Of a stretch of 64,000 nt of DNA, positions 1,669 to 33,014 are shown in pieces. The stretch lies in NCBI RefSeq assembly GCF_001194135.2, contig NC_068984.1:56707740-56771739 (forward strand), read 5' to 3'. The DNA is from Octopus bimaculoides (lineage: Eukaryota). A model generated the notes under the pieces. The model saw only the letters and a list, made by a program, of their open reading frames with translations. It was not told the origin of the DNA and did no database searches. The stretch's first letter is position 1; each line of letters opens with the position of its first letter. Position numbers and translations under genes: made by a program.

Positions 1669-2137
1669 CAAATTTGTTGAGTTGAACTTGTGAAAAATTT
1701 TGATTGCTGTGTGCTGCTTTGCAGTGGTTTTTCTGGTTGAGCTTTCTCTCTATTGAAAGATAGCGATGGTGATGAGTAGAATGTTTAATTCGGATCTCAG
1801 TGGTTCCAAATTGTCCTCTTCAGAGGAGGAATTGGTAAGAGCCATGAACAAGATGGATAATTGTTTGGAAAAAAGAAGCTTTGCGAAGATGACGGAGATA
1901 AAAAGAAAAGGAATCAATATGGCAAACATTAAAGAACACCAAAAGATGGCAAGTAGAGTGGGTGGTGATGTGAAGCTGTCACCACCACAGAACATAGAAG
2001 ACATGATGAAGAAAACCATTGTTTACAAAGTATATGCAGTAGAAGAAAAAAAGATAGAAAAAGTTGAGGTAGAAATAATTGAGAAAGCATTGAGCATGGT
2101 ACACAAGGATATTGTGTTCATGTTGAGAGGAAACAAA
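1669..2137 (+). mobile_element. Insertion flanked by a 16-bp direct repeat, carrying a UTR-like leader and an E/K-rich ORF start (LINE ORF1-like)
   Basis: cattccttctcacact at 1653-1668 and 2138-2153; ORF 1766-2161 begins inside the insert and runs through the second repeat. ORF1 assignment is tentative. Confidence 0.5.
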
Positions 2138-2156
2138 CATTCCTTCTCACACTTAC

Positions 2157-2384
2157 GCTGAAAAGCACTGCGAAGCCAGCAGTCACAGCGGACCCTTGTC
2201 CTGCTCTAACTCCACATGCTTATCTCCAGAGGTAATGAACCTCACATGTACGGAGCTATAACAAACCATGTGCTGCCATAAAGATGGTCTCTGAGAGCGA
2301 ACCACATGAACGAGAACTCTGTAAATAAACAGCTATTGAACTGTACTCCACTTGTGAACTTCTTTGTGTTCCAGATCCTTGAAG
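2157..2384 (-). other. Candidate exon of a minus-strand transcript (228 bp)
   Basis: Acceptor tttttgtag| at 2385 and donor |GTAAGT at 2156-2151 on -. All three frames contain a stop, so it would be non-coding or a last coding exon. Confidence 0.3.
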
Positions 2385-10187: not shown

Positions 10188-11143
10188 NNNNNNNNNNNNN
10201 NNNNNNNNNNNNNNNNNNNNNNNNNNNNNNNNNNNNNNNNNNNNNNNNNNNNNNNNNNNNNNNNNNNNNNNNNNNNNNNNNNNNNNNNNNNNNNNNNNNN
10301 NNNNNNNNNNNNNNNNNNNNNNNNNNNNNNNNNNNNNNNNNNNNNNNNNNNNNNNNNNNNNNNNNNNNNNNNNNNNNNNNNNNNNNNNNNNNNNNNNNNN
10401 NNNNNNNNNNNNNNNNNNNNNNNNNNNNNNNNNNNNNNNNNNNNNNNNNNNNNNNNNNNNNNNNNNNNNNNNNNNNNNNNNNNNNNNNNNNNNNNNNNNN
10501 NNNNNNNNNNNNNNNNNNNNNNNNNNNNNNNNNNNNNNNNNNNNNNNNNNNNNNNNNNNNNNNNNNNNNNNNNNNNNNNNNNNNNNNNNNNNNNNNNNNN
10601 NNNNNNNNNNNNNNNNNNNNNNNNNNNNNNNNNNNNNNNNNNNNNNNNNNNNNNNNNNNNNNNNNNNNNNNNNNNNNNNNNNNNNNNNNNNNNNNNNNNN
10701 NNNNNNNNNNNNNNNNNNNNNNNNNNNNNNNNNNNNNNNNNNNNNNNNNNNNNNNNNNNNNNNNNNNNNNNNNNNNNNNNNNNNNNNNNNNNNNNNNNNN
10801 NNNNNNNNNNNNNNNNNNNNNNNNNNNNNNNNNNNNNNNNNNNNNNNNNNNNNNNNNNNNNNNNNNNNNNNNNNNNNNNNNNNNNNNNNNNNNNNNNNNN
10901 NNNNNNNNNNNNNNNNNNNNNNNNNNNNNNNNNNNNNNNNNNNNNNNNNNNNNNNNNNNNNNNNNNNNNNNNNNNNNNNNNNNNNNNNNNNNNNNNNNNN
11001 NNNNNNNNNNNNNNNNNNNNNNNNNNNNNNNNNNNNNNNNNNNNNNNNNNNNNNNNNNNNNNNNNNNNNNNNNNNNNNNNNNNNNNNNNNNNNNNNNNNN
11101 NNNNNNNNNTGTATATATATATGAATGTATATATATATATATA

Positions 11144-11428
11144 TCATCATCATCATCGTTTAACGTCCGCTTTCCATGCTAGCATGGGTTGGACGATTTG
11201 ACTGAGGACTGGTGAAACCGGATGGCAACACCAGGCTTCAATCTAATTTGGCAGAGTTTCTACAGCTGGATGCCCTTCCTAACGCCAACCACTCAGAGAG
11301 TGTAGTGGGTGCTTTTACGTGTCACCCGCACAAAAACGGCCATGCTCGAAATGGTGTCTTTTATGTGCCACCCGCACAAGCCAGTCCAGGGGCACTGGCA
11401 ACGATCTCGCTCGAAAATCCTACGGGAT
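11144..11428 (-). mobile_element. RTE-type LINE 3' UTR copy
   Basis: Near-identical to 13302-13623 in reverse; (CAT)n tail. Confidence 0.85.
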
Positions 11429-12049: not shown

Positions 12050-13232
12050 CCCCGTAGGTCACTGGAGTGTTATTTGATCACTTTATAGTGTTTGAATGTT
12101 GGTTTGGTGTCTGGAATGGGATAGCTTACCTCATATGCAAGTAGAAGCTCTTTAACCTTTGTTGGTAATCTACCTAGGAGAAGGAAATCTCTGAAATAAA
12201 ACCTGAGGCCTTGTAAGTTCCTGGTTTTGTTGATTTCCATGTGACACTGGCAAAAGTCTTCTTGGGCCAATAGGTGGGGTTAGTACAATGCAGGCTACAC
12301 CCACTGAAAATTATTCATCTGCACAGGTACTTCCTGTACTCCAAATCTTGGTAAAATCATTGAATTGATTGGTTGACAGAAACCTAAAAATGCATTTGTA
12401 ACTTACTCTAAAATGTCTCAGATTCAGTAAATAGCAAAAAGGCTTGGGAACAGGTCTGGCTCAACAGGTGTCCCAATGTATCACAGGCTGGACCTGGTCA
12501 TTATCCTGCCACTGTGGTCAAACAATCTTCAAGAAAAAGTAAAAATAAACTTCCTTTGAATTTTGGTTGTTGGAATGTGCACACTTCTTGATGATAATTT
12601 CAACAAGAGGCCAGAAAGGTGTACTGCACTTATTGCATGTGAGCCTAAGAAATATTCCCTTGATATGGTTGTACTGTCTGAAACTCATCTCTCTGGGGAG
12701 AGTCAAATAAATGAACCTACTTATGGATATATTATCTTTTGGAGAGGCTTACCTAAGGGTCAGCATAGAAAATCTGGTGTTGGGTTTGTCCTCAAGAATA
12801 CATTAGTGTCCTCCATTGCAGAGCTTTCAAGTGGTATATCTGAGTGAATTATATCATGCCATATGAAACTGACAAAAGGTAGGTTTCTTACCGTTGTCAG
12901 TATCTCTGCACCAACAATATCCCATTCTGATAAAACTGTAGGACAGTTTTATGATAATCTAGCTCAATTATTGAGGAAAGTACCAATTTCTGACAAGCTG
13001 ATCATATTGGGAGATTTTAATGCAAGAGTTGGAAAGGACTATGTTTCATGGCCTGTTTTAGATTGATATGGGATTGGAAAATGCAATAAAAATGGAGTAG
13101 TTCTTTTGACGTTTTGTACTGAGAATAATCTGGTTGTCACCAACACTCTGTTTAAGCAGAAAAATAAATATAAAACCACCTGGATACACCCAAGATCTAA
13201 GCACTGGCATCTCATAGATTATATTCTGATCA
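12050..13232 (+). mobile_element. RTE LINE 5' region: 5' UTR plus decayed AP-endonuclease domain
   Basis: One reading frame with a few stops: LSETHL, SGVGF, SAPT, ILGDFNARVG, NGVVLLTFCTENNLVVTNTLFKQK, TWIHPRSKHWHLIDYILI are RTE/BovB APE motifs (coding about 12560-13232). 5' boundary approximate. Confidence 0.9.
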
Positions 13233-13301: not shown

Positions 13302-13623
13302 GGTCACCGCCTGACTGGCTTCCGTAGGATTTTCGAGCGAGATCGTTGCCAGTGCCCCTGGACTGGCTTGTGCGGGTGGCACATAAAAGACACCATTTCG
13401 AGTGTGGCCGTTGCCAGTATCGCCTGACTGGCCTTCGTGCAGGTGACACGTAAAAGCACCTACTACACTCTCTGAGTGGTTGGCGTTAGGAAGGGAATCC
13501 AGCTGTAGAAACTCTGCCAAATTTAGATTGGAGCCTGGTGTTGCCATCCGGTTTCACCAGTCCTCAGTCAAGTCATCCAACCCATGCTAGCATGGAAAGC
13601 AGACGTTAAATGATGATGATGAT
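13302..13623 (+). mobile_element. RTE-type LINE 3' UTR copy
   Basis: GGTTGGCGTTAGGAAGGG..CCAGCTGTAGAAAC..GACGTTAAATGATGATG. Confidence 0.85.
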
Positions 13624-13696
13624 GACTGCTTGGAATCAAACTCGGAATCTTGGGATTAGTAGCCTGCGCTCTTAACCACTATGGCATATGCCCGGG
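13624..13696 (-). mobile_element. tRNA-like SINE head (family C)
   Basis: On -: TAGTGGTTAAGAGCG (A box) ... GAGTTTGATTCC (B box); similar to the head at about 61720-61775. Confidence 0.6.
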
Positions 13697-18200: not shown

Positions 18201-20162
18201 ATACTTATTTTTTAAAGCTTGGTACTTATTCTATCGGTCTTTAGCCGACTCGCTAAGTTACAGGGACGTAAACACATCAACACCGGCTGTCAAGCGTTGG
18301 TGGAACACACACATATACACGACGTGCTTCTTTCAGTTTCTGTCTACCAAAATCCACTCACAAGGCTTTGGCGGGCCCGAGGCTGTAGTAGAAGACACTT
18401 GCCCAAGGTGTCACGCAATAGGACTGAACTCGAAATCATGTGGTTGAGGAGCAAACTTCGCGTGTGTGTCTTTGAATTTGGCAACCAGTTTTGGTTTGTT
18501 TACGTCCTTGCAGCGCAGCAAAAAGATATCGTTAGAACAAGGCTTAAAAAATAAGCACTGGCGTTTAGTCGACTAAATCCTTCATGGCGGTGCTCCAGCA
18601 TGCCGCAATCCAAAGCCTGAAACAAGTAAAAGAATCTAGGGCACAACGCCACAAATTAAATTAGCACCATCTCTACATTTGAAGTGAAGCCTCAGTGCTT
18701 GAATAGTAGTTATTTTATCGAAAGATTAAAAAAAAAAAGGTTAAGTTTGACCACCAGGAAATTTGAACTCAAATAACTTGGAGGTAATCTAGACTTTAGA
18801 TTGGGAACAACTTTCAAAGAACAAGTCGTAGACGATCTGATTCGTTCTTGCGCACACGCTACAACACTGCAGTTTGCCAACCGTCCGACAAAGGCTAACA
18901 GGCCAAAACTTCGAAGCCATCACTCTCCTCGTAAAAGTATAATAATGTCTATTTTACTTTGTTTCAATAGCCGTTTAGACAACCAAAAAAACTCATTTAT
19001 GACAAATAGAAAGAGAGATGCAAAAAGAGTTAGGGTACGAAAAATAAAATTCGTCCCTCACAAATATAACATTCGTTGCCACTGCTATTTTAAATGTATT
19101 TCCTAAAATTAAATTCTGAATCGGTATGGTAGTTGTTAGGACCCACAGAATAGACAGGATCAAAAGCATTCCAACCTTGTTAATACCACTTTCACTTTTT
19201 CTTTTTTTCTGTATTGTAATATCTTGTGCTGAAATGTTCAATATGACTTATCATCTTAAGACTGTAGGGTGGATGGAATTCTCGCAGGTCGTGCGACCAA
19301 GCTGAAGTGTACCCTCGTAACCAACGCCGGACTTTAGGCATAATCTAAACAAGCTACAACGTAGGGTTTAGCAATTTGCAGGAGCTTCAAAAAATGTCAT
19401 AAGAGACCCTCTAGTGTAATTTTTGTTAATAAGAGACCTCCAGTCTTTATGTAGCTTCACCAAATTTAAATCCAGCTCTTTTCGGCCTTACGAGAGAGGT
19501 TTCTAACAATAAAGTGCTAAATATCGGACATATACAGCGAGAGGTTAACTTCAGAACGAAGTTGAAAATATACTAATTAAGAGTCGGGAATCGTCGTGAT
19601 TAAATTGCATTATCGTTTCAATCTTACAAGTTTCGGTCATTTTGGTTCATTATAAACTGAATTCTTGATGGTTTTTTAAAATCACAATTATCAGAAAATA
19701 CATTTTAATGTCTTACTAAATTTGTTGACTTTTGGAAGTGACATGTGACATTTTTCTCGAGAATTGAAACAGGGTTGTATTCTTGTGATTTTGTTTTACT
19801 TCTGCAAGTTAAGTTTCTTAATATAAATTTCATCTCTCTCTTTCACCTCCCATTTCCTCGTCAAAGCCTTCACCACCAACTCTCTGTGTTCATTACCTCC
19901 ACTCACTTCGTTGACTGTCACGGCTCGGAGATTTCAAGTTAGCTTGTTTGACACTGTTGTTCATACTGCCAGTCACATACTGGGACAATTGAACAAGATT
20001 ACCACTATATTGTACCATTCTTAGAACTATGAATAGTCTAATCTTTTGACAATAACAATTCTCTTATACAACCATGGACAAACTGCGATCCGTCTGATGA
20101 AGAACCATGTCTCATGCGGCCCACTTCTCGAAAAAGTTTCTCTCTCTTTCTCTCTATCTATC

Positions 20163-20200
<38 letters not shown>
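15280..20200. promoter_or_regulatory. CpG-retaining, promoter-like region
   Basis: CG dinucleotides visibly frequent at 15.3-16.1, 17.0-17.3 and 18.8-19.95 kb compared with 32-64 kb. CACGTG boxes near 15312, 15398, 15678 and 17073; YY1-like AGACATGGCG on - near 15850. TSS not locatable. Confidence 0.4.
18055..18635. mobile_element. SINE A (-, about 18123-18460) nested inside SINE A (+)
   Basis: Plus copy 5' core at 18055-18120 and 3' tail at 18500-18635 flank a reverse-oriented copy. Confidence 0.75.
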
Positions 20201-20667
20201 TACACAATATATGTCGCGCTGCCTCTAATTCACATTTGAGTAAATATATATATGTGTATGTGAAAAGATATCCGATAGTAATAAAAAATTGTAAAAATAA
20301 TAGATAAAAAAATGTATATATTACTTATATGCTAAAGGGACTTCTGCATACGCTCTGGCCACATCAAAAGTCGAATCTTATGAGCTTTTAAATTGAATTT
20401 TCTTAAAAGTCAATTTCTTATTTCGTCTGGTTTTGAGACAACAATATAAATACAATTCCTCTTTCTGTTTCAAATTGGTGCTTATAATATCTAATTACAT
20501 TGCTAAATTCAGTTGTTAATTCATTCATAATAAATATATGTACTTATTGTTAAGTGAATGGTCGACTTGACATATCATCTAAGAAAGTATGTCACTGTTT
20601 CAGAAAAATATAACCATGTTTTTATACAGTTAATTTTTAAATTTTATTTACAGGATTACTTTTCTTA

Positions 20668-23600
20668 TGAACCCATGGTTTGACAAAGAAAACTATTTGT
20701 AAAGGAAATTGCTCAAAGACGTTACAGTCAGTAGTAAAGAGCGTTTTGCAGTCCTTCCGTTTTCAAGTTAAACATCAATCAGACTCAAACAAATCGGCCC
20801 CTAACCAGGAAAATAATATTGCTCAAACAGAAGGATTAAAGTTTATAAATCAAAAACCGATTAACCGAACGAAACCATCAGATAAAACTTCGTCACTTTC
20901 ATTTATAGATCTAAACACGTGCCCTGAAAATGACTTGAAACAAGGACGGTTACAATGTTAAACAATTTAAAGGGTACCATGGAAATGGTGATAACTATCA
21001 CCCAAATTTCAGTAAAGTACCGAGAAAACAATGTTGTGGAATTCGAAGTTTCTACAATTCTAAAGAGAAAGTCATCAATATCGATAGCCTTTTGAATTTT
21101 GAAAAAACAAAATTACATTTAATCTTTGAAGGGTTCACAGAACGCTCATCTAAATTTGCTTTAATTCCCAATACAAGATGTAGTGCATCTTTCACTTTAA
21201 AGTTTTACAATTCTGATAAATTGAAGGTGAAAGAAACTGAATTACCTATCATTGCACCCATCCATTCTTCAGCAAAATGTGCAAGAACTAAAATTAATAA
21301 ATCAAAACTTAAAAAAAGTTTAAGCTTGAGGAAGTTTCCAAGTAAAATTAAAAGGGTGACATTCTCTAAAAACAAAAGAGTACACCTTAAATCTAAAAAA
21401 ATAGTTAATGTTTTTACTTTAGAGTTCTGGAAATGTTCCGAAATAGTGTCATCTCCAATACATCAAGTTGCTTTACCGGCCAGTGGAGGTAATAGTATCA
21501 TACACAACACTATTCATTCAGAACGTCCAAACCGAATCCCACCACTATGCTTATACAAAGAAAAATTATCGACCAGCGGGTTAAATGTTGTATCAGAATT
21601 TATTTCACCGATAGCAGCAGCTGATTCTTACATGGCAATAGCGACAGTCTCCACAGAAAGGTTACTACTGTCGTAGTTTCCCAGCAGGGAAGTGGTCACT
21701 GTAAGAACAGACTAACCCAAAGCCATGACAACAGGCATAATGATATTACTAACTATATCACAGCTGTTGGAACTGTCGAAGAGACCCCTGGCTGCACATA
21801 TTCAGTATCGGTAATATACTCAAAATTAATACATGGTATGTCCAGTACTGCTGTAACAATTTCATCAGATTTCTCCTCTCGGCTGACCACAGTTAGTGAA
21901 ATAAATTACTTTCCGTCTGTTTTCACAGAAAATTTTCCCAACAGTAAAACTGTATGACAGACCAAGTGAAACTTTGGATACTTATGTCATAGCTGCTAAT
22001 CCGTGTCAACCGAAAACAAATAATGTCGCAGACGGTGGTAACACAAAAGGAACATATCAAAGTAAAGATTATTTGTATAACCGGTTAGAAGATCAAAGTT
22101 ATGAACTTTCATGCCAAACCACATGTTTTTCTAACCAAATACTAGATAAAAGCTTACGTGATGTTACATTCCAGGAAGAATTATCTAATAAAACACAATG
22201 CCAATCACCGCAGCATACATTATTAACCTCCCTATCTAGATTTAAGGAAAGTGTAAAACCAGAATACTTAACAAAAACAAGAGCTGTTTCCAGTCAAGTA
22301 AATAAATATGATCACGAGGTGTCGACCAATACTATTGATCTCAGACTAAATGATTGTTGTATAAACTGCAGACCGTCAGAGGAAGAGGTGTCACTGACTC
22401 CGGACCACACCCAAAATAATGAGCGACGTTTAGTGGCAAGCACGAGAAATGTAGATAGTAAAAATATTTTTTCTAAGGAAATCTTCATCGATAATTTTAA
22501 TAATAATTGCATCACTTCTCTACATTATCTCTGTAGCAACTGCTGCTGTCATCAGTTAAAAACAACTCGTTTGAAGGATACTGTCTGCCAATCATCACAA
22601 TACACTGACAACTTGCCAGACAGCTGCGACGATGATAATGCCACAGAAACAGCATTGCATAGGGATCAGCACGTTACGAAAGGCATTCCAGGAACTTGCC
22701 ACGCGACAAGCGCACTTACCGGCGGAGAAGGCGAGCGAATCACGGCAAAGAAAGAGGGAGAAGTGAAAGCGAACTACATTCTTGGTACTCAGGTACAAGG
22801 AAACGGAATTGTCTACATTTCTACAACACGGATTAATTGTTTGTTACTATCATTTAATAATAATAATCAATCTGATAACACAAATCTTTCTGGTTCTGTT
22901 TTTGACAAGTCTTTTAAAGCTGTCGGTGAGGAAAATTCTCCTTTATATTCGCAATCACATGTTATTACTCCTGATAGTAACACTAACTTCGATTTTCAAT
23001 TTAATAATTCGCAGTATTTGAGAGATACATTAAGCAGTAGTTCGATTTGGAATAAATATCAATCATCCGATAACAAAAGCAAAAGTGATAGCTATGACAT
23101 CATCACCAGTGGCAATGATAGTCCACTCACTCGACACTACATAAACACCAAGTCATTTGTAGACATTACAAATACGTATAATGAGTTCAGTTTTTCATCT
23201 TTGACAAGTATTCGCACCCAAGCAGAATAACATGATGTTCTGCCGACAAAATAACAAAAGTGTCATAGATATCCGTGGCCGATTTCTGACCACACAATTT
23301 TTCCCTCTAGTATCGATAACGATATAGGTGGTCGGTTGTCAGCTGCTCGTGTTAGTGAACAACTGGGAAAGCAGTTAAACCCGAAATGGCTCGATCCCCT
23401 TCCTGGATTTTCTCACAGAATATTTTGACGACGATAACACCACCACCACCAACAACAACAACAAAAATAATGTCATCAGTAATAAGTGCAGCGTAGTTGT
23501 TACTGCCAGAAGCTTAATACCGACGAAGTCGACTCCCTTATCATATTTATCATATTTATCAGCAGCAGGGGGAGAATCTACCCCGACATCACTTTTATCT

Positions 23601-23947
23601 TCTTTTCCATCTATAGTTTTTACTCCTGAGATTCCTTTTCACCCTACCCCAACCATTGAAACATGCGTTAGAAAAGATAGCGGGATAATATCTAGCAACA
23701 GCTTTTCTTACAGCCCAACGTCAGTTATAGCAACTTCATTAGGAAGCGCTACCCAAACAACCTTGGCTCCCTCATGTTTTCCTCTTACTTCTGATAATGT
23801 TGCTCTCACCTCTATACTTGTTTCCGACACTTGCTTACTTGCTGAACACGCGAAAGAAGTGAAGAAAAGAAAAAGTAGACGGAGCGACGGTGGAAGGATA
23901 AAATCAATAAAGTGAGAACTAATAAAAAGAAAAACATATTTGATTGA
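20668..23947 (+). pseudogene. Chain of overlapping stop-free frames upstream of the giant exon (disrupted coding-like extension)
   Basis: Open stretches 20668-20958, 20939-21673, 21625-21954, 21905-23227, 23255-23425, 23379-23912, 23846-23944, all on +, with composition like the giant ORF N-terminus. Confidence 0.55.
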
Positions 23948-24031
23948 GAAACTGTCACTAGTGTTCAACGAGAAGGCCATGTACGGTCCGATGGATTATT
24001 TGGAAATAAACAACTATCTCTGTTTACCCAG

Positions 24032-27000
24032 GAAGAGAAAATTTCGTTCACAGAAAAGTTGAACAATTCACATTTTCTTCTCGTTCAAAATCCTCGTAAT
24101 CCTTATCACCATCATAGTAATTTATGCTTTAATGAAGCGAAGACTGGTTGCAACCAGCAAGTTAGCAGTCGTAATTACTGTGGCACCGAGAACACAGTAA
24201 ATCATTTTGGGCTGCTTTCTCCCTACTCTGCAACAAAGGGGCCGCCGTGTATCGAAGCTACTTACTGCTGTGACTGCTGTACAACTAATCATCATTACTA
24301 CACCAACTCCGGTACTAACAAAAGTAACGTTATTACTACAACTACTGACAGTACCTGCGTTACAAGGACCACTTGCATTAAGGTAAGCAAGAGTGAAAGA
24401 TCGTGGAAAAGTAGTGATACTTTTGACTCTGATAAGGAAACCTGTCGAGTAAGCACTAACCAAACGACCGACTGCGTTGTTTGTACTTTAGGCTATCGCG
24501 GAAATGAACTGTCTAATGCGGCGGCAACAACGACAGCAACATCAACAACAACATCATCATCAACAACAACAACTTCAACAACTCACACAGATCATATACC
24601 AGTGGCTTGTAACGAAACCGTTCTGAAAGAGGGTTCGCTACCGTTGTTTATCCATGCTGATAGTCTGTTACATAGGAAGTATAGCGGCAACCGTAGTAGT
24701 AGTAGCTCTGTCTTATTGACAGAGCAAGCAGCAGTACACGACCACCCCACATGCACGGCAATACGGTCACTTTTACCAACCTATTCCAACTACGTTGGTA
24801 TAGCCAGCAGCAACAGTGGTTGTAGCGGTGACGGAGACGGCGGGGAAAAGCCTATCGCAGACACTGGAACAGCGGAACTTGCGCTGCTGGAACTGAAAAC
24901 GAAACCGGTCAGTACACCTCTGTATTTACCTCCTCAAACTAAACATTCTCCGTACGGAAACAGTGATCGTTTGTGTTGTCAATACAAATACTATTCTGAC
25001 AAACGTGAAACACGACAGAACTTTTCAAACAAATCGACCAATTACAGGTGTATAACTGCAAAATTCCCAAGTGCACAGTCAGTAGCGAGAGAAGCAGAGT
25101 CGTTACAACAACTGCTGTGCGGTAGTGATAATTCTGATAATGTTGTTCTTTCTTCAAATGATGTTTGTGGAGATATCGAGTCGGGTTCGGAAACGCGGAT
25201 AAATTTCAATGAAGGCCCTAACATGGATTCTACAAAAATTATTAACAACCAACCTGCTGACGGATTTCATAACTCAATAGTCTACCGAAAGTGTGACAGA
25301 ATCTCTGGTGAGGGTTCTGGTGAAATTATTTTATCTTCGGACTACGGTGGTGTATCCTCCGGTAATCGCGTTGAAATGAAAAAAAGTTCATCTCCTTGTA
25401 AAATACCTGTTCAACAGAAACAAAAGACAAACATGAGTACAGGGACTAAACATTCTGTGAAATCCAGCCAGCTTCCTCGTGGAAAATCTACTTTGATTGA
25501 TCAGACCACCAGGATCTCCTTTAACAAACAAACCAGCCAACAGACAAGTGCTGACAGTAGTAGACTTCCGTCTAAATGCACAGGTAAAAAATCTTCTCTT
25601 GTTAATGGGGATACGAATGTTAAGAAACAAGGTGATAAAAATACAACAAATTTAAAAAATATCAACGTGGGTAAATCTGTTAGTAGTTCTAAAATACATC
25701 GTAACACAGCATTAAGTAAAACTAAACATCAAACAACCAGTGATATAAGTTCTAAAAATTGTAATGAATTAATTTCAATTGATAAACATATTTCTACAGT
25801 TCTGTCTGAAGAGTCACCAGAAGATAGTGAATCAGCTATTGATGAAGTGAAAGTAGTTAATGAATTAAATGATAAATTCCGTCTTCGGTCAGATTCAGAG
25901 TCCAGCCATGCTAGCCATTCTTCTTTTTGTTCCCAGCTATCCACTTCATCGGTTAAATCATCTATTTGTCTTCCAAGTTCCACTAAAGGTGGGCTTGGGA
26001 AAACTAGTAAAATTCTTACAAGCTCCTGTTCTCGTTTAGCTGTGTCTAAAGCAGAAACAAAACTACAGAAAAAACCGTCCATGCTAAGCCGTACCACCTC
26101 ATCCACAACTGTCTCTCGAACTAGTAATTCTGCTTTGTCTCACCCATCCAAGTCATCTCCTGCACATTCACGCCTAACGTCACGAGTTAACACTGAAAAC
26201 TTACAAAGAGCTGTGAGCACAGGTTCTTTAAGAAATAATTCCAATAAATCTAGTATTCCTCCTACTGGCAGACCTAATACAACAGTTACAAAAAGTAGTG
26301 GTTTGTCACTGAGGCAAAAGAAAATTGCTGATTCAGCATCTGATCTTTCAGTTAACTGCACAACTAGATTAGGTAGCAAAATTCAAAACAAAGAAAGTTT
26401 AAAGACAGTCAGTTCCGAGAATTTGTCAAACAAAATTCAAAACTCATTTGGAAGAAGTTGTGAAAATTTAACAAAAAAGAAAAAAAATGTGTTACAAGCA
26501 AGTTGTGAAAATTTGTCAGTTAAATCTCGCAATAATTGTGTCACCACTCCTGACTGTACACTTCAACAAAAAGGTATTTCGCACAATAAAAAATTAACTT
26601 CCACTCAAAACATTAACAATGGAGGTTTGGTTCATCAAAAGGAAAAATACAGTGGTGGTATGTCTTTATTGAAGGCGAGCAGAATTAGTGGCAGCAGCAG
26701 CAGTTCAATTCCTACTGCCGCAACTGCAGCTGATAAACTGGACAATAAAAAATTAAGTAATCTCCGCTCTAGCACCTCCGCAGTTACTGAGCGGAGAACA
26801 GGTGTGGGGCTAGGTAGCAACCAGGAGGGCAAACCAACCACTAATATTGATAGATCTCAGATTAAAAAGAGTGTACCAGCTACAGGTAAAAAAACTACAT
26901 CATTAAAATCAAATGAAGCTATTGAACCATTATCTAAAAAGAAACTTGTAGCAAAAACAAGTCGAGGTTTTAGTGACCATAAAGTGACTTCTAATTTGCC

Positions 27001-30000
27001 TACTGCTTCTTCTAAAGCTTCATCTGGCATTAAAAAGTCTAAGTTGTTAGAGGCTCAGTCTAATAATGTGATTAGTCAGACAGCTGGCAAAAACTTTCAG
27101 GGAAGAGCAACCTATGACAGTAACCGGTTACAGCTGGATAAAACCAAGAATACACTTTCTGTTAATGAGGTAGAAAATTTGGAATTACATTATAAAGAAC
27201 TAGATGATGCACCTGAAAATGAAGATAAAGTTGACAAAGATAGCTCATCAACAAAACCAAATATTTCTGAAAATTTTGCTTATGATGATTACATGATTAT
27301 AACTGAGGCCCTTTCTGATGAAAGCATATCTGGGCCCAGTGTACATGTCGGAGATTTAGACAATGTTTCAAACCCCAACCACCTCTCTGATGTTGATGCT
27401 TCGGAAAGTTATCAAACTAGTTCTTCAGCTTCTGCCCTGGACATCAGTTTACATGAGGACTATGTGTATAATGGATCTCTTGTGACCTCTTCTAGTGACA
27501 ACTGCACCGACAAGCACACTGGCTTCCAGCGCACACAGTCAGCTGTCCATGCTTGCAGAGAAGTTACCAACAGCTACCAGGCTAACACCAGTGAGGATGA
27601 GTGTAGTGAAAAAGAAGAAAAAGAGGAAACAGAGAGAAAAGAAGACATAGAGGAAAACAGAGTAAAACTAAAATTATCAGACCATGGTGTAATTAAATCT
27701 GATGCCTATTCTGATAAAACTTTTGACTATGAAGCTAGTTATGACTGTAATCTTTCCAGCTGTGGCTATCAGCAGCCACAGAAACATTATGGACAGCCCT
27801 ACCCCCATCAACAATATCCCCACCATCCCCCTCAACACCATTATCATCCCCCACACCAATCTACTGGAACTGAGAATAGTTTTAAAAATTTATCAACAGA
27901 TGAAGGGAGGGGTGCTCAGTCTAGTCCACAGCTTCATAGTATTAATGATAGTAAATGTGTGTATAGCTTTGAATTTGAAGAGGGACAAAATCAAAAGCAG
28001 GCGGAAGAAGATGGGGAGGAAAAAGCAGTGGGTGAGAGTGAAAACTTAGAAGAGAAAGCATCAGTGGTTGTATTTAAGTCAGCTGACATTTACAGAGTGG
28101 CAGGGCATGGGATGCCAGTAGTAGAGTTCACCCCGCCCCAAATAGCCCACCACAATATTTTGAGGAATGAAAACAGTGGTAGTGGTGGTTGTAACCCAGT
28201 TTCTGCTACAGACAGAACAAGTAAAGATGTGACAGCTACCAAAACTACTACAGTTCTGAGGGGAGACGCTGATACTGAAGGAGAACTCGCAGGAGCTGAG
28301 AGAAGCGATGAGGAAGCTGTCGACTGCCCTGTCAACAGACTGTTGCAAAGAGAAAGAGACAGACCAACATCATTCACACAAGTAAATGTTGGTGAAGAAG
28401 CTCTGTTTAAGCAGCAGATAAGTTTTGGTGAAGTTGCTGTGACAACAACAACAACAACAATACTTGCAGCAACAATAAAAGCTGATGTTACCAATTCCAG
28501 CCTTCAGGAAATGGCAGACCAACCAGGGATCCAGTCCTCTAAACTACAACTAGGAGATCTTCATACATCTCAGTCAAGAACCCAGTCCTACAACAGAGAT
28601 GTCATGTGTGAAAAAGGTGACTTATCAAGGAGTACTGCTACGCTGTTTATGGAAGAACAACAACAACAGCTGAATTCTAATGCAACCAGGCAGATGACAG
28701 GCCCATTCTTACCATCTGAAATGGGATTCCTTGCTGGTCAGATGCTCAGCCCCTGCAGTAATGACAGCAGTAGCTTCAAAGATATCAGTGATGGTGCTGT
28801 CACACCTCTCAGTGATGTACAGGAAATATTTGACCAGGAAACCTCTCAACTGAATGACATGGGCAATGTGGATGAGCTAAGCAGTACCTGTAAACTTGTT
28901 AGTGATATTACAGAAGGTGAAGTTGAAGGTGTCCTTATAGAAATTGAAGACAGTACTTTACAAGTGTCTGGGAGTCCAGATGGTGAAGACGAGATTATAG
29001 TAGAAGAGCAGGATTATGTTGTGACTGATGAGAGGAATTATAATGAAGAATCAACTCATTTTACAAATGATGATATAATCGGTGAACGTCCAATTGTGGA
29101 TGCTGGAGAAGATCTTGCTGAAGTGACGCTGGATAGTAATGAAACACAAAATTTATGGTTCTCAATTGAAGCAGAAACAGACAGTCAATATGAAAATCTT
29201 AGTACATCAATCACACTAGAAAATATAGCGGAATCTAGTATTGGAGAGGATGTTGAAGAACTCCTTGACCAGACTCCCAGTATTGAATCTAGCAACACCT
29301 CCTCACGAATTCATGGAAATTTACGTGAAAGTATTCTGAGGCAGTTACAAACACAAATAAGTGAAGATGATGCTCCAGATATTTTAACAGAGGAAATATC
29401 TCCAAGCCTTGAGCATTTGCAGTTAAGAACAAAATCTGAGGAAACTGATTTTGGTGAATCTGATCAACAACTAATATCAGGATGTAATGAAAAAATGATT
29501 AACAAAGATTTTTATTTGCATTCCCATCAATTGGAACCCTGTTTTCATACTGATTCCCTAGCTGAGAATATCCAACAAAGATCTGCTGATGTGAAACTGG
29601 ATAACTTTAAAAGTCAAACTAAAAACAGTTTGTCTGGAAATACTGTTTTAGATGATAAAAACTTACTTGAAACAAATGTCAACTTTAATGAAGATGTGCA
29701 GAGAGCATATACTAATAGCCTTAAATATGGATATAAAAATGAATTTGATTCTTTGGATGTCAATATTTGTAATAATGATATTTCTCAAGAAATGGAAATA
29801 GAAGACGGAGGTTTTGTTATTCTCAAGAATGAAGGAGTGAAGAAAACCAATGATAATTCCAATCAGGATTTCACACTTCGGCAACTTCAGGGAACTCTCA
29901 ATCTAAGGAAACAGAAAATTCTTGAACTTTGTGGGCAAACAGAATCAGTTTCAAGCAAGGATATTAAATCGCCCTCTCCTACAAAGATTTCAATTGATAG

Positions 30001-32104
30001 AAAAGAAAGGTCACCAAGTTTTAAAAGATTGGATGCTTTTTGTACAAGCCCTGGGAGTGTTAATGAAAATATTAGCCCTACAAAAGCTAATTCTTCTTCA
30101 GCATTAAACATACCAAAAGCAGACACATTGCAAAACCTAAGTCCAAAGACAGATGAAATAGTTTCACCAATAAAAGAATCTTGGATCAAACATGAAGGAA
30201 AATGGAAAAGAGGATATATACTTGATGATGGTTCAAGTGTTCCGTCTGAAAAATATCAGGATTACATTTTGAAATCTATACCAGTTACTCCAAGCAGTGA
30301 TGGAGAACACAGTTTTGAGAAATATTCCTCAGCACAGATTGTGAAGAGTGATAGTTTTGAAGAAAATTCCTTGACTTTAAAGCAAGAACAAAGTAGTAAT
30401 TTTGAAGAAATTTCTAAATGCAGAATGGAATTGTTTAATCAGAACCCTGTACTCGAAGAAGAAGTCTTTGGAAATAATGAAGCAGAATTCACTCATGAAA
30501 ATTTTAAAATGCACAAAACTGTGTTGGGAGATATTATAAGCAGTAAAGAATCTTATGATTCTGTAGATGGCCAGCCATCTGAAATAAATATGCTTTCTCT
30601 TGACACCAACTCAAAAATAAAGGATTATGGAGAAACTGAGATAACTGAGGCTGAGATGACACATAAATCACAAGCTGAGCTAACTTTGCAGACTGAAAGT
30701 GTTCAACCAGTCATTACAGAACAGAAGACTTATTCACCAGAAATTGTGGATGACATACCATTTGTTGATATGGATGAAACTGTATGTGACTCCAACATTG
30801 TTAGCATTGCTTCAGTTAAGCTAAAAAATAGTGCATCTCAAGATATTCCTGAAGTCACTCCTACGCAGGATACACTTAGTTCAGTGAACACGGAGTTTAA
30901 AAGCAAAGAGATGGTATCCATATTGGATTTACAAGAAAATACCATGGAGCAAGTTCCTCATCCTTCAGTGATTGAATCAACTTCTTATAATGAGCATGAA
31001 ACAGCTGTTGATTTGGATACTATTACAGATGACCCAAGCACACATTCTTCTGTTGATGAGTTGAAGTGTGAGCCACTTATTGATTCGGGTTTTGAACACC
31101 CACTTCATGAGTTTGATAATGTATCAATGGCTGTTTCAGATATTGTAACCACGAATGATACTGATATTGAACGATTAATAGATTCAGGCATTGCACAACC
31201 TTCAGATATGGATTGGGTTCCTATTACAGATGAATATAATATTTTACCTGCTAATGCTGAAGAGTGTATACCATATTTGAACTGTGAACCAGTGAATGGA
31301 AATAAAAGGATGCAACATGATTCAGATGATGCACTACCAATCCACAGGAAAGAAGTAGTAAATGAAATTAAAATTGACTCTCCTAGAAAACTCATTGATT
31401 CTCAGTCCCTGCCAATGGATATACCTCAAGGAAAAATCCCAGGATTAAGTACAGATACTGAAAGAAATAAAATAAAAAATAAACATACAGAGAAACAAGA
31501 AATGAATTTTGCAAACAGTTCAGATACCTACCATACATCTGAGGAAACAGAATCATCATTAGGAAATCAAAGAGATATGTCCATGTTAGAGCAAGATATT
31601 TATGCTTCTTCACCTAGAGAAGTTGGTTCTTTATGTGATGAAATTTTCAGCATTATTGGTTCACCAACTTTATTGAATGAATCTTGGAAGAAATTGTCAC
31701 AGAATAAATCTGAAAGTGACTTAAGCAAAAGTGAGAATGAACTCTATTTTGATGGAAAAAGAACATACAGAAATTTACCCACGTCTCGATCAGTTTATGC
31801 AAACATTATTCGATCTTCTATTTATGAAAACTCTGAATCAGAAAGTTCAGAATCACTGGATTCTATCACCAAAACAAGTTATGATGATTTAAAACAGACC
31901 AAAGATAAAAACAACATCAAACTGAAAGGACAGGGATACTCTTCAAACGAGGATTCTCCTGAAGGTTTAATGTCATCCATGGATTTCTATTTAGATGCCA
32001 GCGAATTTGCTCGAGCTTGTTGGTCTGATAGGAGTACCTTGTCTGAATTCTACCCAGTTGGATCACATCAGAAATTGAGAGCTAGTGATTCATCTACCTA
32101 CGGG
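24032..32104 (+). CDS. Giant coding exon (about 8.07 kb, 2,691 codons) of an unidentified large, mostly disordered protein
   Basis: Stop-free frame 23948-32176 in AT-rich DNA. Consensus donor GGG|GTAAGT at 32104/32105 in phase 0. Candidate in-frame acceptor ctatctctgtttacccag|GAA at 24031/24032; alternative start is the first in-frame ATG at 25223 (aacATGG). The 5' boundary is uncertain; no globular domain recognised. Confidence 0.85.
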
Positions 32105-32110
32105 GTAAGT
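32105..32110 (+). promoter_or_regulatory. 5' splice donor ending the giant exon
   Basis: GTAAGT; composition switches at once to T-rich intron-like sequence and the frame stops 25 codons later (TGA 32177-32179). Confidence 0.85.
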
Positions 32111-33014
32111 AATTTATTTTTCCCACATTTTCATTTATTAATATTATATTATAACCAGTGTCACACTACTAATATCTGATGGTTTCTGTCTTTGTTGTGC
32201 ACAACCTCCTTTTACACACATACACATGCACCTGTCCTTCTATAGTAAATCTGATACCTTTTAGTTTATCCTTTGTTATTATAAAAAAAATTTCACATTT
32301 ACATACATGTAAGATATTGTACTAAATGAATCTGGTGATAAAGTGAAATTGGCAATCTTTATTCTGTTTTTGTATTTTAGAAGTTGACTCTTGAATGAAG
32401 ATTTTCAGTTGTCTGTTTCTACAATTGTGATTATTGAGATACACTAAAATATATATTAAGACAGATTGCTAGCTAGTGTGACTGAGTAAAATAGTGTATT
32501 TGATAGATAAAAAGTGATTGGGTAATAGAGTTCACCTTATTAAGCGTACACCCATACATTGAAAGCTATGTTTTGCCTCACAGTCTCTTTCACCTGATTG
32601 CTTTTTGACCAACTGCTTAGCTTTCTCTGTATAATTTTATGAATAAACTAATGTCATAGACTCTAGCTTACTCTTTTTACATGTATTGAATTTTCACAAT
32701 TTTTTTTCTGTATTCAAATAAGCTTATCATTTTTGGTGGGTATCGGGCTAGTGTGTGTATGCGTTTTTACACACACAAAGAGTTTTTGACTAAAACTCAA
32801 GAAGCAAAACCTCATCAATAAGTATAAGTAATTTGTCACAACTCTAACAGCACATATATATATATGTATGTATATGTGTGTGTGTGTGTATATACACACT
32901 ACTTATAAATATGCATACAGAGACATGTGTACATACATGTCTGTGTGTATGTGTGTGTCTGTATATACACCACTCATATATACATAAAAATGTATATATA
33001 TGTGTACATATGAA

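What the first reader, a model, noticed from the sequence alone, without database searches (positions are those of the whole stretch)
20668..23947. 3.3-kb chain of broken reading frames leading into the giant ORF
Seen: successive overlapping stop-free stretches on + of about 97, 245, 110, 441, 57, 178 and 33 codons. They are joined by five apparent frameshifts (about 20940, 21625-21676, 21905-21957, 23379-23428, 23846-23915) and three in-frame stops (TAA 23228, TAA 23252, TGA 23945). The 245- and 441-codon pieces share the giant ORF's frame and its Ser/Thr/Asn/Cys-rich composition (CCINC, CSNCCCH versus YCCDCC). Such lengths are unexpected in AT-rich DNA, and the next 8.2 kb has no disruption. 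Inference: a former ~11.4-kb exon (acceptor ttttatttacag| at 20653) whose 5' part is decaying. Alternatives are internal alternative acceptors (in-frame tctgttttcacag| at 21928), coding sequence being gained, or assembly errors.
Basis: partly seen in the sequence, partly recalled or inferred. Interest (0 to 1): 0.7.

Follow-up and report, generated by a model that had tools for sequence, protein, structure and literature searches.

The report
Decayed coding leader of octopus RhoGEF exon
The broken reading frames are real: they are the remains of about 1,400 codons that once extended a giant exon of an Octopus bimaculoides Rho-GEF gene, and they have decayed independently in two octopus lineages, which is an ordinary kind of event though an unusually large and clear example.

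Summary
The window is Octopus bimaculoides DNA. The giant ORF is the first coding exon of LOC106874706, an SH3-RhoGEF-PH protein.

The chain of stop-free stretches is real, apart from the last '33-codon' stretch, which contains a TAG. It is far beyond chance: observed 441, 425, 245 and 178 codons, against a maximum of 235 in 900 simulations. A codon-usage score that ignores stops follows the same frame switches.

Two contigs from a more distant octopus cover 20693-32144. In that species:
- one open frame runs through each of four O. bimaculoides frameshift sites (bim -4 at 21652, -14 at 21953, +1 at 23402, +5 at 23861);
- the three O. bimaculoides stops are sense codons;
- there are about 38 different lesions of its own.

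So the common ancestor had one continuous ORF from at least 20959.

- The coding sequence under selection starts only at ATG 25223. The first 425 codons of the 'giant ORF' are also unconstrained.
- The 96-codon piece and the acceptor at 20653 are unverified.
- The interval 22450-25222 is conserved at the nucleotide level but not as coding sequence, so it is probably a 5' leader.

Assembly error, chance, de novo gain and the old spliced gene model are rejected or disfavoured. Interest is modest.

The parts
20641..20653 (+). Candidate 3' splice site ATTTTATTTACAG|GAT. This is the possible 5' edge of the ancestral exon; it is unverified.
   Evidence: The sequence is shown. TTACAG|GAT is conserved in the other octopus, and recognisable homology stops just upstream. 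The codon-usage signal is absent upstream of about 20650.
20671..20958 (+). Stop-free stretch of 96 codons in frame 0. Its membership of the chain is not supported.
   Evidence: Coordinates are. The length is within chance. The codon-usage score is only 0.06. Divergence is 20% with many indels. No clean indel marks the 20940 junction.
20939..21673 (+). Relic coding piece of 245 codons in frame 1.
   Evidence: Coordinates are. It is longer than any of 900 simulated runs. The codon-usage score is positive in frame 1. Its 3' end is 83% identical, as protein, to an ORF of the other species.
21648..21655 (+). Frameshift 1 (frame 1 to frame 0). O. bimaculoides lacks 4 nt here that the other octopus has.
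   Evidence: Indel at 21652. The other species keeps a constant frame across it. Its ORF at L002 795-1259 reads from the 245-codon piece into the 110-codon piece.
21625..21954 (+). Relic coding piece of 110 codons in frame 0.
   Evidence: Coordinates are. Frame 0 scores best at 21550-22000. It is 75% identical, as protein, to the same ORF of the other species that covers the 245-codon piece.
21916..21928 (+). Candidate 3' splice site TCTGTTTTCACAG|AAA. This is the possible present-day start of the exon (5' leader).
   Evidence: The AG and the pyrimidine tract are conserved in the other species. The old gene model P0005 starts exactly at 21929. Divergence falls from 16% to 6% downstream of this point.
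21950..21956 (+). Frameshift 2 (frame 0 to frame 1). O. bimaculoides lacks 14 nt here that the other octopus has.
   Evidence: Indel at 21953. The other species keeps frame 0 on both sides.
21905..23227 (+). Relic coding piece of 441 codons in frame 1, with no in-frame ATG.
   Evidence: Coordinates are. The codon-usage score reaches 0.35. The other species has 11 frameshifting indels and 2 nonsense changes inside it. The ratio of synonymous to non-synonymous changes is 19:57, the same as in the off-frames.
23228..23230 (+). In-frame TAA, derived in the O. bimaculoides lineage.
   Evidence: The other species has CAA here.
23252..23254 (+). In-frame TAA, derived in the O. bimaculoides lineage.
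   Evidence: The other species has GAA here.
23255..23425 (+). Relic coding piece of 57 codons in frame 1.
   Evidence: Coordinates are. The other species' ORF at L002 2617-2841 covers this piece and continues into the frame-2 piece.
23400..23404 (+). Frameshift 3 (frame 1 to frame 2). O. bimaculoides has 1 extra nt here.
   Evidence: Indel at 23402. The other species keeps a constant frame across it, and its ORF is continuous there.
23379..23912 (+). Relic coding piece of 178 codons in frame 2.
   Evidence: Coordinates are. Frame 2 scores best at 23350-23950. It is 88% identical, as protein, to an ORF of the other species.
23861..23947 (+). Complex last junction (frame 2 to frame 1). It contains a 5-nt indel at 23861, a TAG at 23876 that lies in frame 1 in both species, a 2-nt indel at 23896, and the in-frame TGA at 23945.
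   Evidence: TGA 23945 is AAA in the other species. The exact ancestral reading path through this junction is not resolved.
23948..25222 (+). The first 425 codons of the 'giant ORF'. They are open in O. bimaculoides but lie upstream of the annotated start and are not under coding constraint.
   Evidence: All RefSeq isoforms that were read start at 25223. The other species has 6 frameshifts and 5 nonsense changes here. Synonymous to non-synonymous changes are 11:31, 3:16 and 2:9 in its three sub-intervals.
24525..24582 (+). A (CAA)n microsatellite inside the relic. Both foreign contigs end here.
25223..25225 (+). The present start codon (MDSTKIINNQ), with A at -3 and G at +4.
   Evidence: It is the start of all O. 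bimaculoides and O. sinensis RefSeq isoforms that were read. The context is conserved in the other species. The coding-type substitution pattern begins here.
25223..32104 (+). The constrained coding part of the giant exon (2,294 codons), ending at the donor GGG|GTAAGT.
   Evidence: Divergence by codon position is 4.2%, 4.0% and 8.3%, and all 8 indels are multiples of 3. Synonymous to non-synonymous changes are 159:158.

Best explanation
The interval from about 20.9 kb to 25.2 kb is the relic of an N-terminal coding extension of at least about 1,400 codons. It belonged to the giant first coding exon of the octopus SH3-RhoGEF-PH gene LOC106874706.

In the common ancestor of O. bimaculoides and a more distant octopus, one uninterrupted frame ran from at least 20959 into today's coding sequence. 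Translation of that stretch was then given up. The most likely cause, which is inferred, is loss of the upstream start codon or start exon. Initiation then fell to the next in-frame AUG, at 25223. This would also explain why the relic contains no in-frame ATG.

Without selection on the frame, each lineage collected its own frameshifts and stop codons. O. bimaculoides has 4 mapped frameshifts and 3 derived stops. The other octopus has about 27 frameshifts and 11 nonsense changes.

The part upstream of about 21.9 kb now evolves like intron. The part from about 22.4 kb to 25.2 kb is still conserved at the nucleotide level, with no codon periodicity. It is therefore probably kept in the mRNA as a long 5' leader of the same exon (inferred; no RNA data were available).
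For: - Stop-free runs of 441, 425, 245 and 178 codons compare with a simulated maximum of 235 in 900 simulations.
- A codon-usage log-ratio that ignores stops switches frame 0, 1, 0, 1, 2, 1 at the same places as the open frames, and vanishes upstream of 20650.
- Stop frequency per frame mirrors that of the true coding sequence.
- Every RefSeq isoform that was read, in both O. bimaculoides and O. sinensis, starts at MDSTK, which is position 25223.
- Downstream of 25223, the window and L001 differ by 4.2%, 4.0% and 8.3% at the three codon positions. All 8 indels are multiples of 3, and synonymous to non-synonymous changes are 159:158.
- Upstream, pooled differences by codon position are 74, 79 and 64. 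This fits a uniform pattern (p = 0.45) and differs from the coding pattern (p = 3e-9). Synonymous to non-synonymous changes are 72:214, against the coding ratio with p = 3e-10.
- L002 is orthologous to 20693-24554 and differs by 41 indels, 35 of which are not multiples of 3.
- At 21652, 21953, 23402 and 23861 the frameshift in O. bimaculoides coincides with an indel, and the other species' frame is continuous.
- Single ORFs of the other species bridge the 245- and 110-codon pieces and the 57- and 178-codon pieces.
- The stops in O. bimaculoides are CAA, GAA and AAA in the other species.
- Divergence is 19-22% in the intron tail and in 20693-21450, but 6-7% in 22450-25222.
- No dispersed repeat lies in 20.6-32.1 kb, although such repeats are frequent in the flanks.
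Against: - No species with an intact extension was found, and there is no homologue outside octopods. The ancestral ORF is therefore inferred, not observed.
- No amino-acid-level constraint is detectable in any piece, so the extension must have been weakly constrained even while it was translated.
- The two foreign contigs come from different runs and do not overlap. That they are one species and one locus is inferred from their abutting ends and similar divergence.
- The lesion asymmetry (7 against 38) is unexplained without rooting the tree.
- O. bimaculoides has no lesion in 23948-25222, so translation of that part in this species is not excluded.
- No transcript data were available, so the '5' leader' status and both candidate acceptors are untested.
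Confidence: 0.8

Rival explanations
1. The exon is still intact in the animal, and the frameshifts and stops are errors of a gap-rich draft assembly.
For: The window has many N gaps flanked by (TA)n repeats, so it is a draft scaffold. All lesions lie within 3.3 kb.
Against: - Three lesions are base substitutions. The indels are 4, 14, 1 and 5 nt and do not lie in long homopolymers.
- The adjoining 6.9 kb of coding sequence shows only in-frame differences from an independent assembly.
- The other species is even more broken in the same interval.
- Substitutions show no coding constraint.
Confidence: 0.03
2. The pieces are still coding in O. bimaculoides. In this view they are joined by splicing, as in the old gene model that uses 21929-22083, 22372-23175 and 24118 onward. 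Alternatively, at least the 425 codons before ATG 25223 are translated from a non-AUG codon or from an upstream exon.
For: - P0005 is exactly this three-exon model. It has GT-AG introns of 288 and 942 nt, and the second intron removes every lesion between 23228 and 23945.
- O. bimaculoides has 0 lesions in 23948-25222, against 11 in the other species (p = 5e-4 under equal rates).
- Non-AUG N-terminal extensions are a known class (PMC3105428, listed).
Against: - The RefSeq isoforms that were read, in two species and including older and current O. bimaculoides accessions, all start at 25223 and do not use these introns.
- Both model introns are multiples of 3, which is typical of a gene predictor stepping over stops.
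- Three of the four splice sites are destroyed in the other species.
- The model 'intron' 23176-24117 is as conserved as its flanks.
- Synonymous to non-synonymous changes are about 1:3 everywhere.
- There is no in-frame ATG.
Confidence: 0.12
3. The long open frames are a by-product of base composition (an A-rich, T-poor strand) or of chance, and the region was never coding.
For: The + strand has a positive AT skew across 20-32 kb. The 96- and 110-codon pieces are within the chance range.
Against: - Simulations that keep up to tetranucleotide statistics never reach 245 codons, and the second-longest run never exceeds 151.
- The codon-usage signal is frame-specific and switches with the open frames.
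- ORFs of the other species bridge the breaks in O. bimaculoides.
- Amino-acid composition resembles that of the coding sequence and not its off-frames.
Confidence: 0.02
4. Coding sequence is being gained: the open frames are a growing de novo extension in the O. bimaculoides lineage.
For: O. bimaculoides has far longer open frames than the other species (441 against 157 codons).
Against: - Eleven frameshifting differences inside the 441-codon frame would all have had to be 'repaired' in O. bimaculoides.
- At every stop in O. bimaculoides the other species has a sense codon, and the reverse also holds. The lesions are therefore the derived state.
- The codon-usage signal is present throughout.
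Confidence: 0.02
5. The breaks are read through in the cell by recoding. In this view A-to-I editing of UAA or UGA to UGG removes the stops, and programmed ribosomal frameshifting handles the frame changes.
For: Coleoid cephalopods edit mRNA heavily (general knowledge; papers listed). In principle all three stops could be edited to Trp codons.
Against: - Editing cannot repair indels of 4, 14, 1 and 5 nt.
- The frameshift sites are lineage-specific indels, not conserved slippery sites.
- There is no coding constraint and no Rfam element.
Confidence: 0.01

Closest known systems
Partial (intragenic) pseudogenisation, or N-terminal truncation by a downstream shift of the start codon, in which former coding sequence becomes 5' UTR or intron
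   Same: - Disabling frameshifts and stops.
- A neutral ratio of synonymous to non-synonymous changes.
- Independent lesions in different lineages.
- The rest of the gene stays under purifying selection, and a conserved AUG takes over.
   Different: - The size is unusual: at least 1,400 codons inside one exon.
- The relic remains readable as 441- and 425-codon frames.
- The downstream 2.8 kb stays conserved at the nucleotide level instead of drifting.
Non-AUG-initiated N-terminal extensions (Ivanov et al. 2011, PMC3105428)
   Same: There is a long, ATG-free, in-frame open stretch directly upstream of the annotated AUG (425 codons in O. bimaculoides).
   Different: That class is defined by conservation of the open frame with a coding-type substitution pattern. 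Here the other species has stops and frameshifts, and the pattern is flat.
Long-isoform N-terminal exons of the ARHGEF4, ARHGEF9 and SPATA13 group of Rho-GEFs (the host gene family)
   Same: Precomputed Pfam hits give SH3, RhoGEF (DH) and PH domains. Source databases name the relatives 'Rho guanine nucleotide exchange factor 4' or '9-like'. A long, disordered, alternative N-terminal exon precedes the catalytic module. Shorter isoforms start from a downstream first exon, as in the O. vulgaris and Argonauta models.
   Different: The giant exon and its relic have no detectable homologue outside octopods. Orthology to a particular vertebrate GEF was not tested.

Membership tests
Pseudogenised (relic) coding sequence | Disabling lesions (frameshifts or premature stops) relative to an ancestral open frame | tested here: met
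   There are four mapped frameshifts and three derived stops in O. bimaculoides. The other species keeps frame continuity or sense codons at each of these sites.
Pseudogenised (relic) coding sequence | Loss of coding-type selection: a neutral ratio of synonymous to non-synonymous changes, no excess at third codon positions, and indels of any length | tested here: met
   Synonymous to non-synonymous changes are 72:214 here against 159:158 in the coding sequence (p = 3e-10). Codon-position counts are 74, 79 and 64. Of 41 indels, 35 are not multiples of 3.
Pseudogenised (relic) coding sequence | Homology to a sequence known to be coding and intact somewhere | tested here: not met
   Besides the old O. 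bimaculoides gene model, the searches found only one broken ORF of another octopus. The O. sinensis locus could not be fetched. The ancestral ORF is reconstructed by inference only.
Non-AUG-initiated or upstream-exon-initiated N-terminal extension | The open frame upstream of the annotated AUG is conserved across species with coding-type substitutions | tested here: not met
   In 24553-25222 the other species has two in-frame stops and a +1/-1 frameshift pair. Divergence by codon position is 7.5%, 5.3% and 4.9%. Synonymous to non-synonymous changes are 5:25.
Programmed ribosomal frameshifting | A conserved shift site with both frames conserved on either side in related species | tested here: not met
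   Each shift site is a lineage-specific indel, and the other species reads straight through. No Rfam frameshift element is present.
5' untranslated leader of the giant exon | Presence in the mature mRNA upstream of the start codon | not testable with these tools
   Only indirect evidence exists. Nucleotide divergence is 6-7% against a neutral 19-22%. A conserved AG lies at 21928. The interval contains no repeat insertions.
SH3-DH-PH Rho-GEF (host gene) | SH3, RhoGEF (DH) and PH domains in the product | tested here: met
   Precomputed Pfam hits on P0001-P0003 and on the O. sinensis gene are PF00018/PF07653/PF14604, PF00621 and PF00169/PF22697. These domains lie outside the window.

The most novel reading that the evidence does not exclude
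The relic may not be merely decaying. One possibility is that the 2.8 kb from about 22.4 to 25.2 kb was converted from coding sequence into a functionally constrained RNA leader. Its nucleotide divergence is about 3-fold below neutral, and below that of synonymous sites in the adjoining coding sequence. A second possibility is that O. bimaculoides kept translating part of the extension until very recently, or still does: the 425 codons before the AUG carry no lesion, against 11 in the other octopus. Either case would make this locus a dated natural experiment. It would show a giant disordered N-terminus being shed and its sequence re-used as a regulatory element.
Probability: 0.3. Interest if true: 0.5.

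Novelty: new member of a known kind. Interest (0 to 1): 0.3.

Why it matters
- **Annotation.** The result fixes the start of this gene. The coding sequence begins at 25223. The 425 open codons before it, and the old spliced model, should not be annotated as protein.
- **A clean example.** It shows that a very large N-terminal region (at least 1,400 codons) of a giant exon can be dropped while the rest of a 3,500-residue signalling protein stays under selection. The lesions accumulated independently in two octopus lineages and can be dated.
- **An open question.** The non-coding conservation of the downstream relic, and the slow synonymous rate of the exon, add one locus to the question of what constrains cephalopod transcripts beyond the protein code.
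- **Overall.** Otherwise the finding is an ordinary outcome of gene evolution.

Tried and rejected
- **Pfam.** A scan of all pieces and of the giant ORF gave nothing above noise.
- **Rfam.** A scan of 19500-25500 found nothing.
- **Duplication.** blastn and tblastx of the relic against the rest of the window, and against itself, found nothing. It is therefore not a copy of the downstream exon and not a repeat. Tandem repeats are limited to a (TA)n, the (CAA)n and one 27-mer.
- **Homologue search.** A search with the concatenated pieces found only the old O. bimaculoides model. A three-frame query with X at every stop returned nothing at all, not even that model.
- **Exhaustive search.** It was rerun with the 441-codon piece alone, which found P0023.
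- **O. sinensis and O. bimaculoides DNA.** P0003 is not on record. The O. sinensis gene spans 755 kb, so no DNA was returned. Guessed ORF products of the window, and P0005, are not on record. The O. sinensis state is therefore unknown.
- **Sequencing runs.** The two runs could not be traced to a paper or a species name.
- **Cluster look-ups.** These added no further species for the relic.
- **Other ideas considered and dropped.**
  - RNA editing as a rescue, because it cannot mend indels.
  - Selection against upstream ATGs as the cause of the ATG-free frame. ATGs are plentiful in the other two frames, with 27 in frame 2 and 8 in frame 0.
  - A substitution spectrum biased towards A/G. It is not unusual.
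Full report
**What the window is.** Protein searches identify the giant ORF as the first coding exon of Octopus bimaculoides LOC106874706. RefSeq calls it 'uncharacterized protein'. UniRef and O. vulgaris entries call its relatives 'Rho guanine nucleotide exchange factor 4' or '9-like'. Precomputed Pfam hits are SH3, RhoGEF and PH. The O. sinensis orthologue LOC115210255 spans 755 kb. The window has N gaps bordered by (TA)n repeats and carries dispersed SINE-like repeats, so it is a draft scaffold.

**Check of the observation.** The listed stop-free stretches exist:
- 96 codons, frame 0, 20671-20958
- 245 codons, frame 1, 20939-21673
- 110 codons, frame 0, 21625-21954
- 441 codons, frame 1, 21905-23227
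- 57 codons, frame 1, 23255-23425
- 178 codons, frame 2, 23379-23912
- 2743 codons, frame 1, 23948-32176

The stops TAA 23228, TAA 23252 and TGA 23945 are there. So are the Cys-rich motifs and the two AG sites. One detail is wrong: the last '33-codon' frame-1 stretch contains a TAG at 23876.

**More than chance.** Markov simulations of 20668-25222 (orders 1-3, 300 each) gave a median longest run of 95-106 codons. The maximum was 235, and the second-longest run was never above 151. The observed runs are 441, 425, 245 and 178. The minus strand reaches 121, and seven other non-coding blocks of the window reach at most 134. Stop frequency per frame in the region is 0.021 in frame 1, 0.044 in frame 2 and 0.10 in frame 0. 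This ranking matches that of the true coding sequence: 0, 0.05 and 0.148.

A codon-usage log-ratio was trained on the coding sequence, with stop codons ignored. Its best-scoring frame changes as follows:
- frame 0 at 20650-20950 (weak)
- frame 1 at 20950-21700
- frame 0 at 21550-22000
- frame 1 at 21850-23500
- frame 2 at 23350-23950
- frame 1 from 23800 onward

It is negative in all frames upstream of 20650. The pieces are rich in Ser, Thr and Asn like the coding sequence, and unlike its off-frames. They are not copies of anything else in the window.

**Where the real coding sequence starts.** All eight RefSeq isoforms that were read (five from O. bimaculoides, three from O. sinensis) begin with MDSTKIINNQ. 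This maps to ATG 25223, which is codon 426 of the giant ORF. The exon ends at 32104 (GGG|GTAAGT).

A 7.7-kb Logan contig from another octopus (L001, run SRR11869391) aligns to 24553-32144 at 93.7% identity. The two sides of 25223 behave differently:

| Measure | Downstream of 25223 | 24553-25222 |
|---|---|---|
| Differences at codon positions 1, 2, 3 | 4.2%, 4.0%, 8.3% | 7.5%, 5.3%, 4.9% |
| Indels | all 8 are multiples of 3 | includes a +1/-1 frameshift pair |
| Synonymous : non-synonymous single changes | 159:158 | 5:25 |
| In-frame stops in the other species | none | two |

The ATG and its context (A at -3, G at +4) are conserved. So the first 425 codons of the 'undisrupted' ORF already belong to the unconstrained zone.

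**The second contig.** An exhaustive search with the 441-codon piece found only the old O. bimaculoides gene model and one 155-residue ORF, P0023. P0023 lies on a 3.9-kb Logan contig (L002, run SRR11869385). L002 aligns to window 20693-24554 at 85% identity. It ends where L001 begins, inside a (CAA)n microsatellite. I treat both contigs as one species ('the other octopus'). This rests on the abutting ends, on similar divergence at the join and on each having been seen in four samples. It is an inference.

On the giant-exon protein this species is an outgroup to O. bimaculoides plus O. sinensis. Lineage-unique differences are 38, 46 and 130.

**Polarity of the lesions.** L002 differs from the window by 41 indels, and 35 of them are not multiples of 3. 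Its longest open frame is only 157 codons. Tracking the frame offset block by block gives these results:
- The frameshifts in O. bimaculoides at 21652 (4 nt fewer), 21953 (14 nt fewer), 23402 (1 nt more) and 23861 (5 nt more) each coincide with an indel. The other species' frame stays constant across each one.
- One ORF of the other species (L002 795-1259) matches the end of the 245-codon piece at 83% and then runs on into the 110-codon piece at 75%.
- Another ORF (L002 2617-2841) runs from the 57-codon piece into the 178-codon piece.
- The three stops in O. bimaculoides are CAA, GAA and AAA in the other species.
- Conversely, the other species has about 25 further frameshifting indels and 9 nonsense changes at codons that are sense in O. 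bimaculoides. It has 2 more of each in 24553-25222.

No lesion is clearly shared. Two points stay unresolved. The first is the TAG at 23876, which lies in frame 1 in both species, inside a messy junction that also holds a 5-nt and a 2-nt indel. The second is the 20940 junction, where the alignment is poor and no clean indel is seen.

The common ancestor therefore had one continuous frame from at least 20959 to the present coding sequence. This is shown for four junctions and three stops, and inferred for the rest.

**Selection.** In every piece, synonymous to non-synonymous changes are about 1:3 in the putative coding frame, the same as in the off-frames. Pooled, the ratio is 72:214, against 159:158 in the coding sequence (p = 3e-10). 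Codon-position counts are 74, 79 and 64, which fits a uniform pattern (p = 0.45) and not the coding pattern (p = 3e-9).

Divergence is not uniform along the relic:
- 18-20% at 20700-21450 and 16% at 21700-21950. This resembles the 22% of the intron tail after 32104.
- 7.6% at 21450-21700.
- A fall from 11% to 5.6% between 21950 and 22450.
- 5-8% from there to 25222, apart from 11.5% at 23200-23449 and 10.8% at 24450-24554. This is lower than the 9.5% at four-fold sites of the adjoining coding sequence.

The downstream 2.8 kb is thus constrained, but not as coding sequence. No mixture of 'coding then neutral' phases reproduces third positions that are more conserved than those of the real coding sequence. 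I read this as retention in the transcript as a 5' leader. That reading is an inference.

A conserved AG at 21928 lies where conservation begins. The old model P0005 starts exactly there. No dispersed repeat has inserted anywhere in 20.6-32.1 kb.

**The old gene model.** P0005 equals window 21929-22083 plus 22372-23175 plus 24118-29482. Its two 'introns' are 288 and 942 nt, both multiples of 3. The second removes all lesions between 23228 and 23945. Three of its four splice sites are destroyed in the other species, and its second 'intron' is as conserved as its flanks. None of the RefSeq isoforms read uses these introns. It looks like a gene predictor stepping over stops.

**Mechanism.** The most likely history is as follows.
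1. A long, weakly constrained, Met-poor disordered N-terminal extension was translated from an upstream start. That start is unidentified. The ATGs at 21632 and 21838 are not conserved, so an upstream exon is likely.
2. That start was lost, and initiation fell to the next in-frame AUG at 25223.
3. The stretch in between then lost frame selection.

This also accounts for the absence of any in-frame ATG in about 1,100 relic codons in both species. The relic is by definition what lies before the first in-frame ATG. The first 1,100 codons of the coding sequence are themselves Met-poor, with only 7 Met.

The lesion counts, 7 against 38, are far from equal (p = 1.6e-6). They become compatible with neutrality in both lineages only if the other species' long branch is all due to rate (p = 0.17). 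Without O. sinensis DNA I cannot say whether O. bimaculoides lost the extension later.

**Rivals.**
- Assembly error is contradicted by the kinds of lesion, by the clean adjoining coding sequence and by the second species.
- Chance or base composition is contradicted by the simulations, the frame-specific codon signal and the bridging ORFs.
- De novo gain is contradicted by the polarity of the lesions.
- Editing or programmed frameshifting is contradicted by the indels being lineage-specific.
- The one rival that survives in part is continued translation of the 425 lesion-free codons in O. bimaculoides, either from a non-AUG codon or by splicing.

**Comparison and novelty.** This is a partial, intragenic pseudogenisation with a downstream shift of the start codon, which is a known kind of event. 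It is unusual in three respects:
- its size;
- the legibility of the relic;
- the non-coding conservation of its downstream part.

It fails the conservation test that defines non-AUG N-terminal extensions (PMC3105428). No paper in the library mentions this locus.

**Limits.**
- Only two species were compared, and the second is unnamed.
- There are no transcript, read or ribosome data.
- The neutral rate rests on about 190 nt of intron plus the 5' relic.

Noticed in passing
window 25223-32104 compared with 32105-32310 and 20693-21450: Four-fold degenerate sites of the giant exon differ by only 9.5% between the two octopuses. The intron tail and the 5' relic differ by 19-22%. Synonymous sites therefore evolve at about half the apparent neutral rate. 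This could be constraint on the transcript or a lower local mutation rate.
   Followed up: partly
window 21905-25222: There is no in-frame ATG in about 1,100 relic codons, in either species. ATGs are plentiful in the other two frames: 27 in frame 2 and 8 in frame 0. With so many out-of-frame upstream ATGs, a 3.3-kb leader would be hard to scan to the AUG at 25223. This raises the question of where the transcript really starts.
   Followed up: partly
window 24525-24582: A (CAA)n microsatellite encodes a Thr/Ser-rich run inside the open frame. Both foreign Logan contigs break exactly here.
   Followed up: no
window about 6289, 13700, 18120, 33370, 39170, 41470, 53080, 55340: A dispersed repeat family of 200-430 bp, 65-79% identical and SINE-like, occurs every few kb in the flanks. 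It is absent from 20.6-32.1 kb. A second family lies at 1101-1405, 11141-11425 and 13322-13625, at 84-89% identity.
   Followed up: no
window 12563-12847 (+): A short ORF whose translation (...VVLSETHLSGES...GVGFVLKN...) looks like the endonuclease end of a LINE-type retrotransposon. This is my reading of the translation and was not tested.
   Followed up: no
window about 5.1-5.4, 10.1-11.1, 17.6-18.1, 33.2-33.4, 50.6-50.9 and 62.9-63.2 kb: Runs of N are bordered by (TA)n microsatellites. Assembly gaps therefore sit in TA repeats, and none lies inside the finding.
   Followed up: no
window 21450-21700: An island of low divergence (7.6%, 4 gap columns) lies inside otherwise neutral-looking sequence. 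It coincides with the one place where the other species keeps a 155-codon open frame, at window 21446-21896.
   Followed up: no
window about 27.7-28.0 kb (within the coding sequence): A run rich in His, Pro, Gln and Tyr (YQQPQKHYGQPYPHQQYPHHPPQHHYHPPHQ) is conserved in all three octopuses. The longest off-frame open stretch of the exon (118 codons, 27693-28046) overlaps it.
   Followed up: no
window 1766-2161 (+): An ATG-initiated ORF of 131 codons of unknown nature lies 19 kb upstream. It was not examined.
   Followed up: no
search tool behaviour: A 3,831-residue query with X at every stop returned no hit at all, not even the 99%-identical P0005 that a cleaner query had found. A negative result from such a query should not be trusted.
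   Followed up: no
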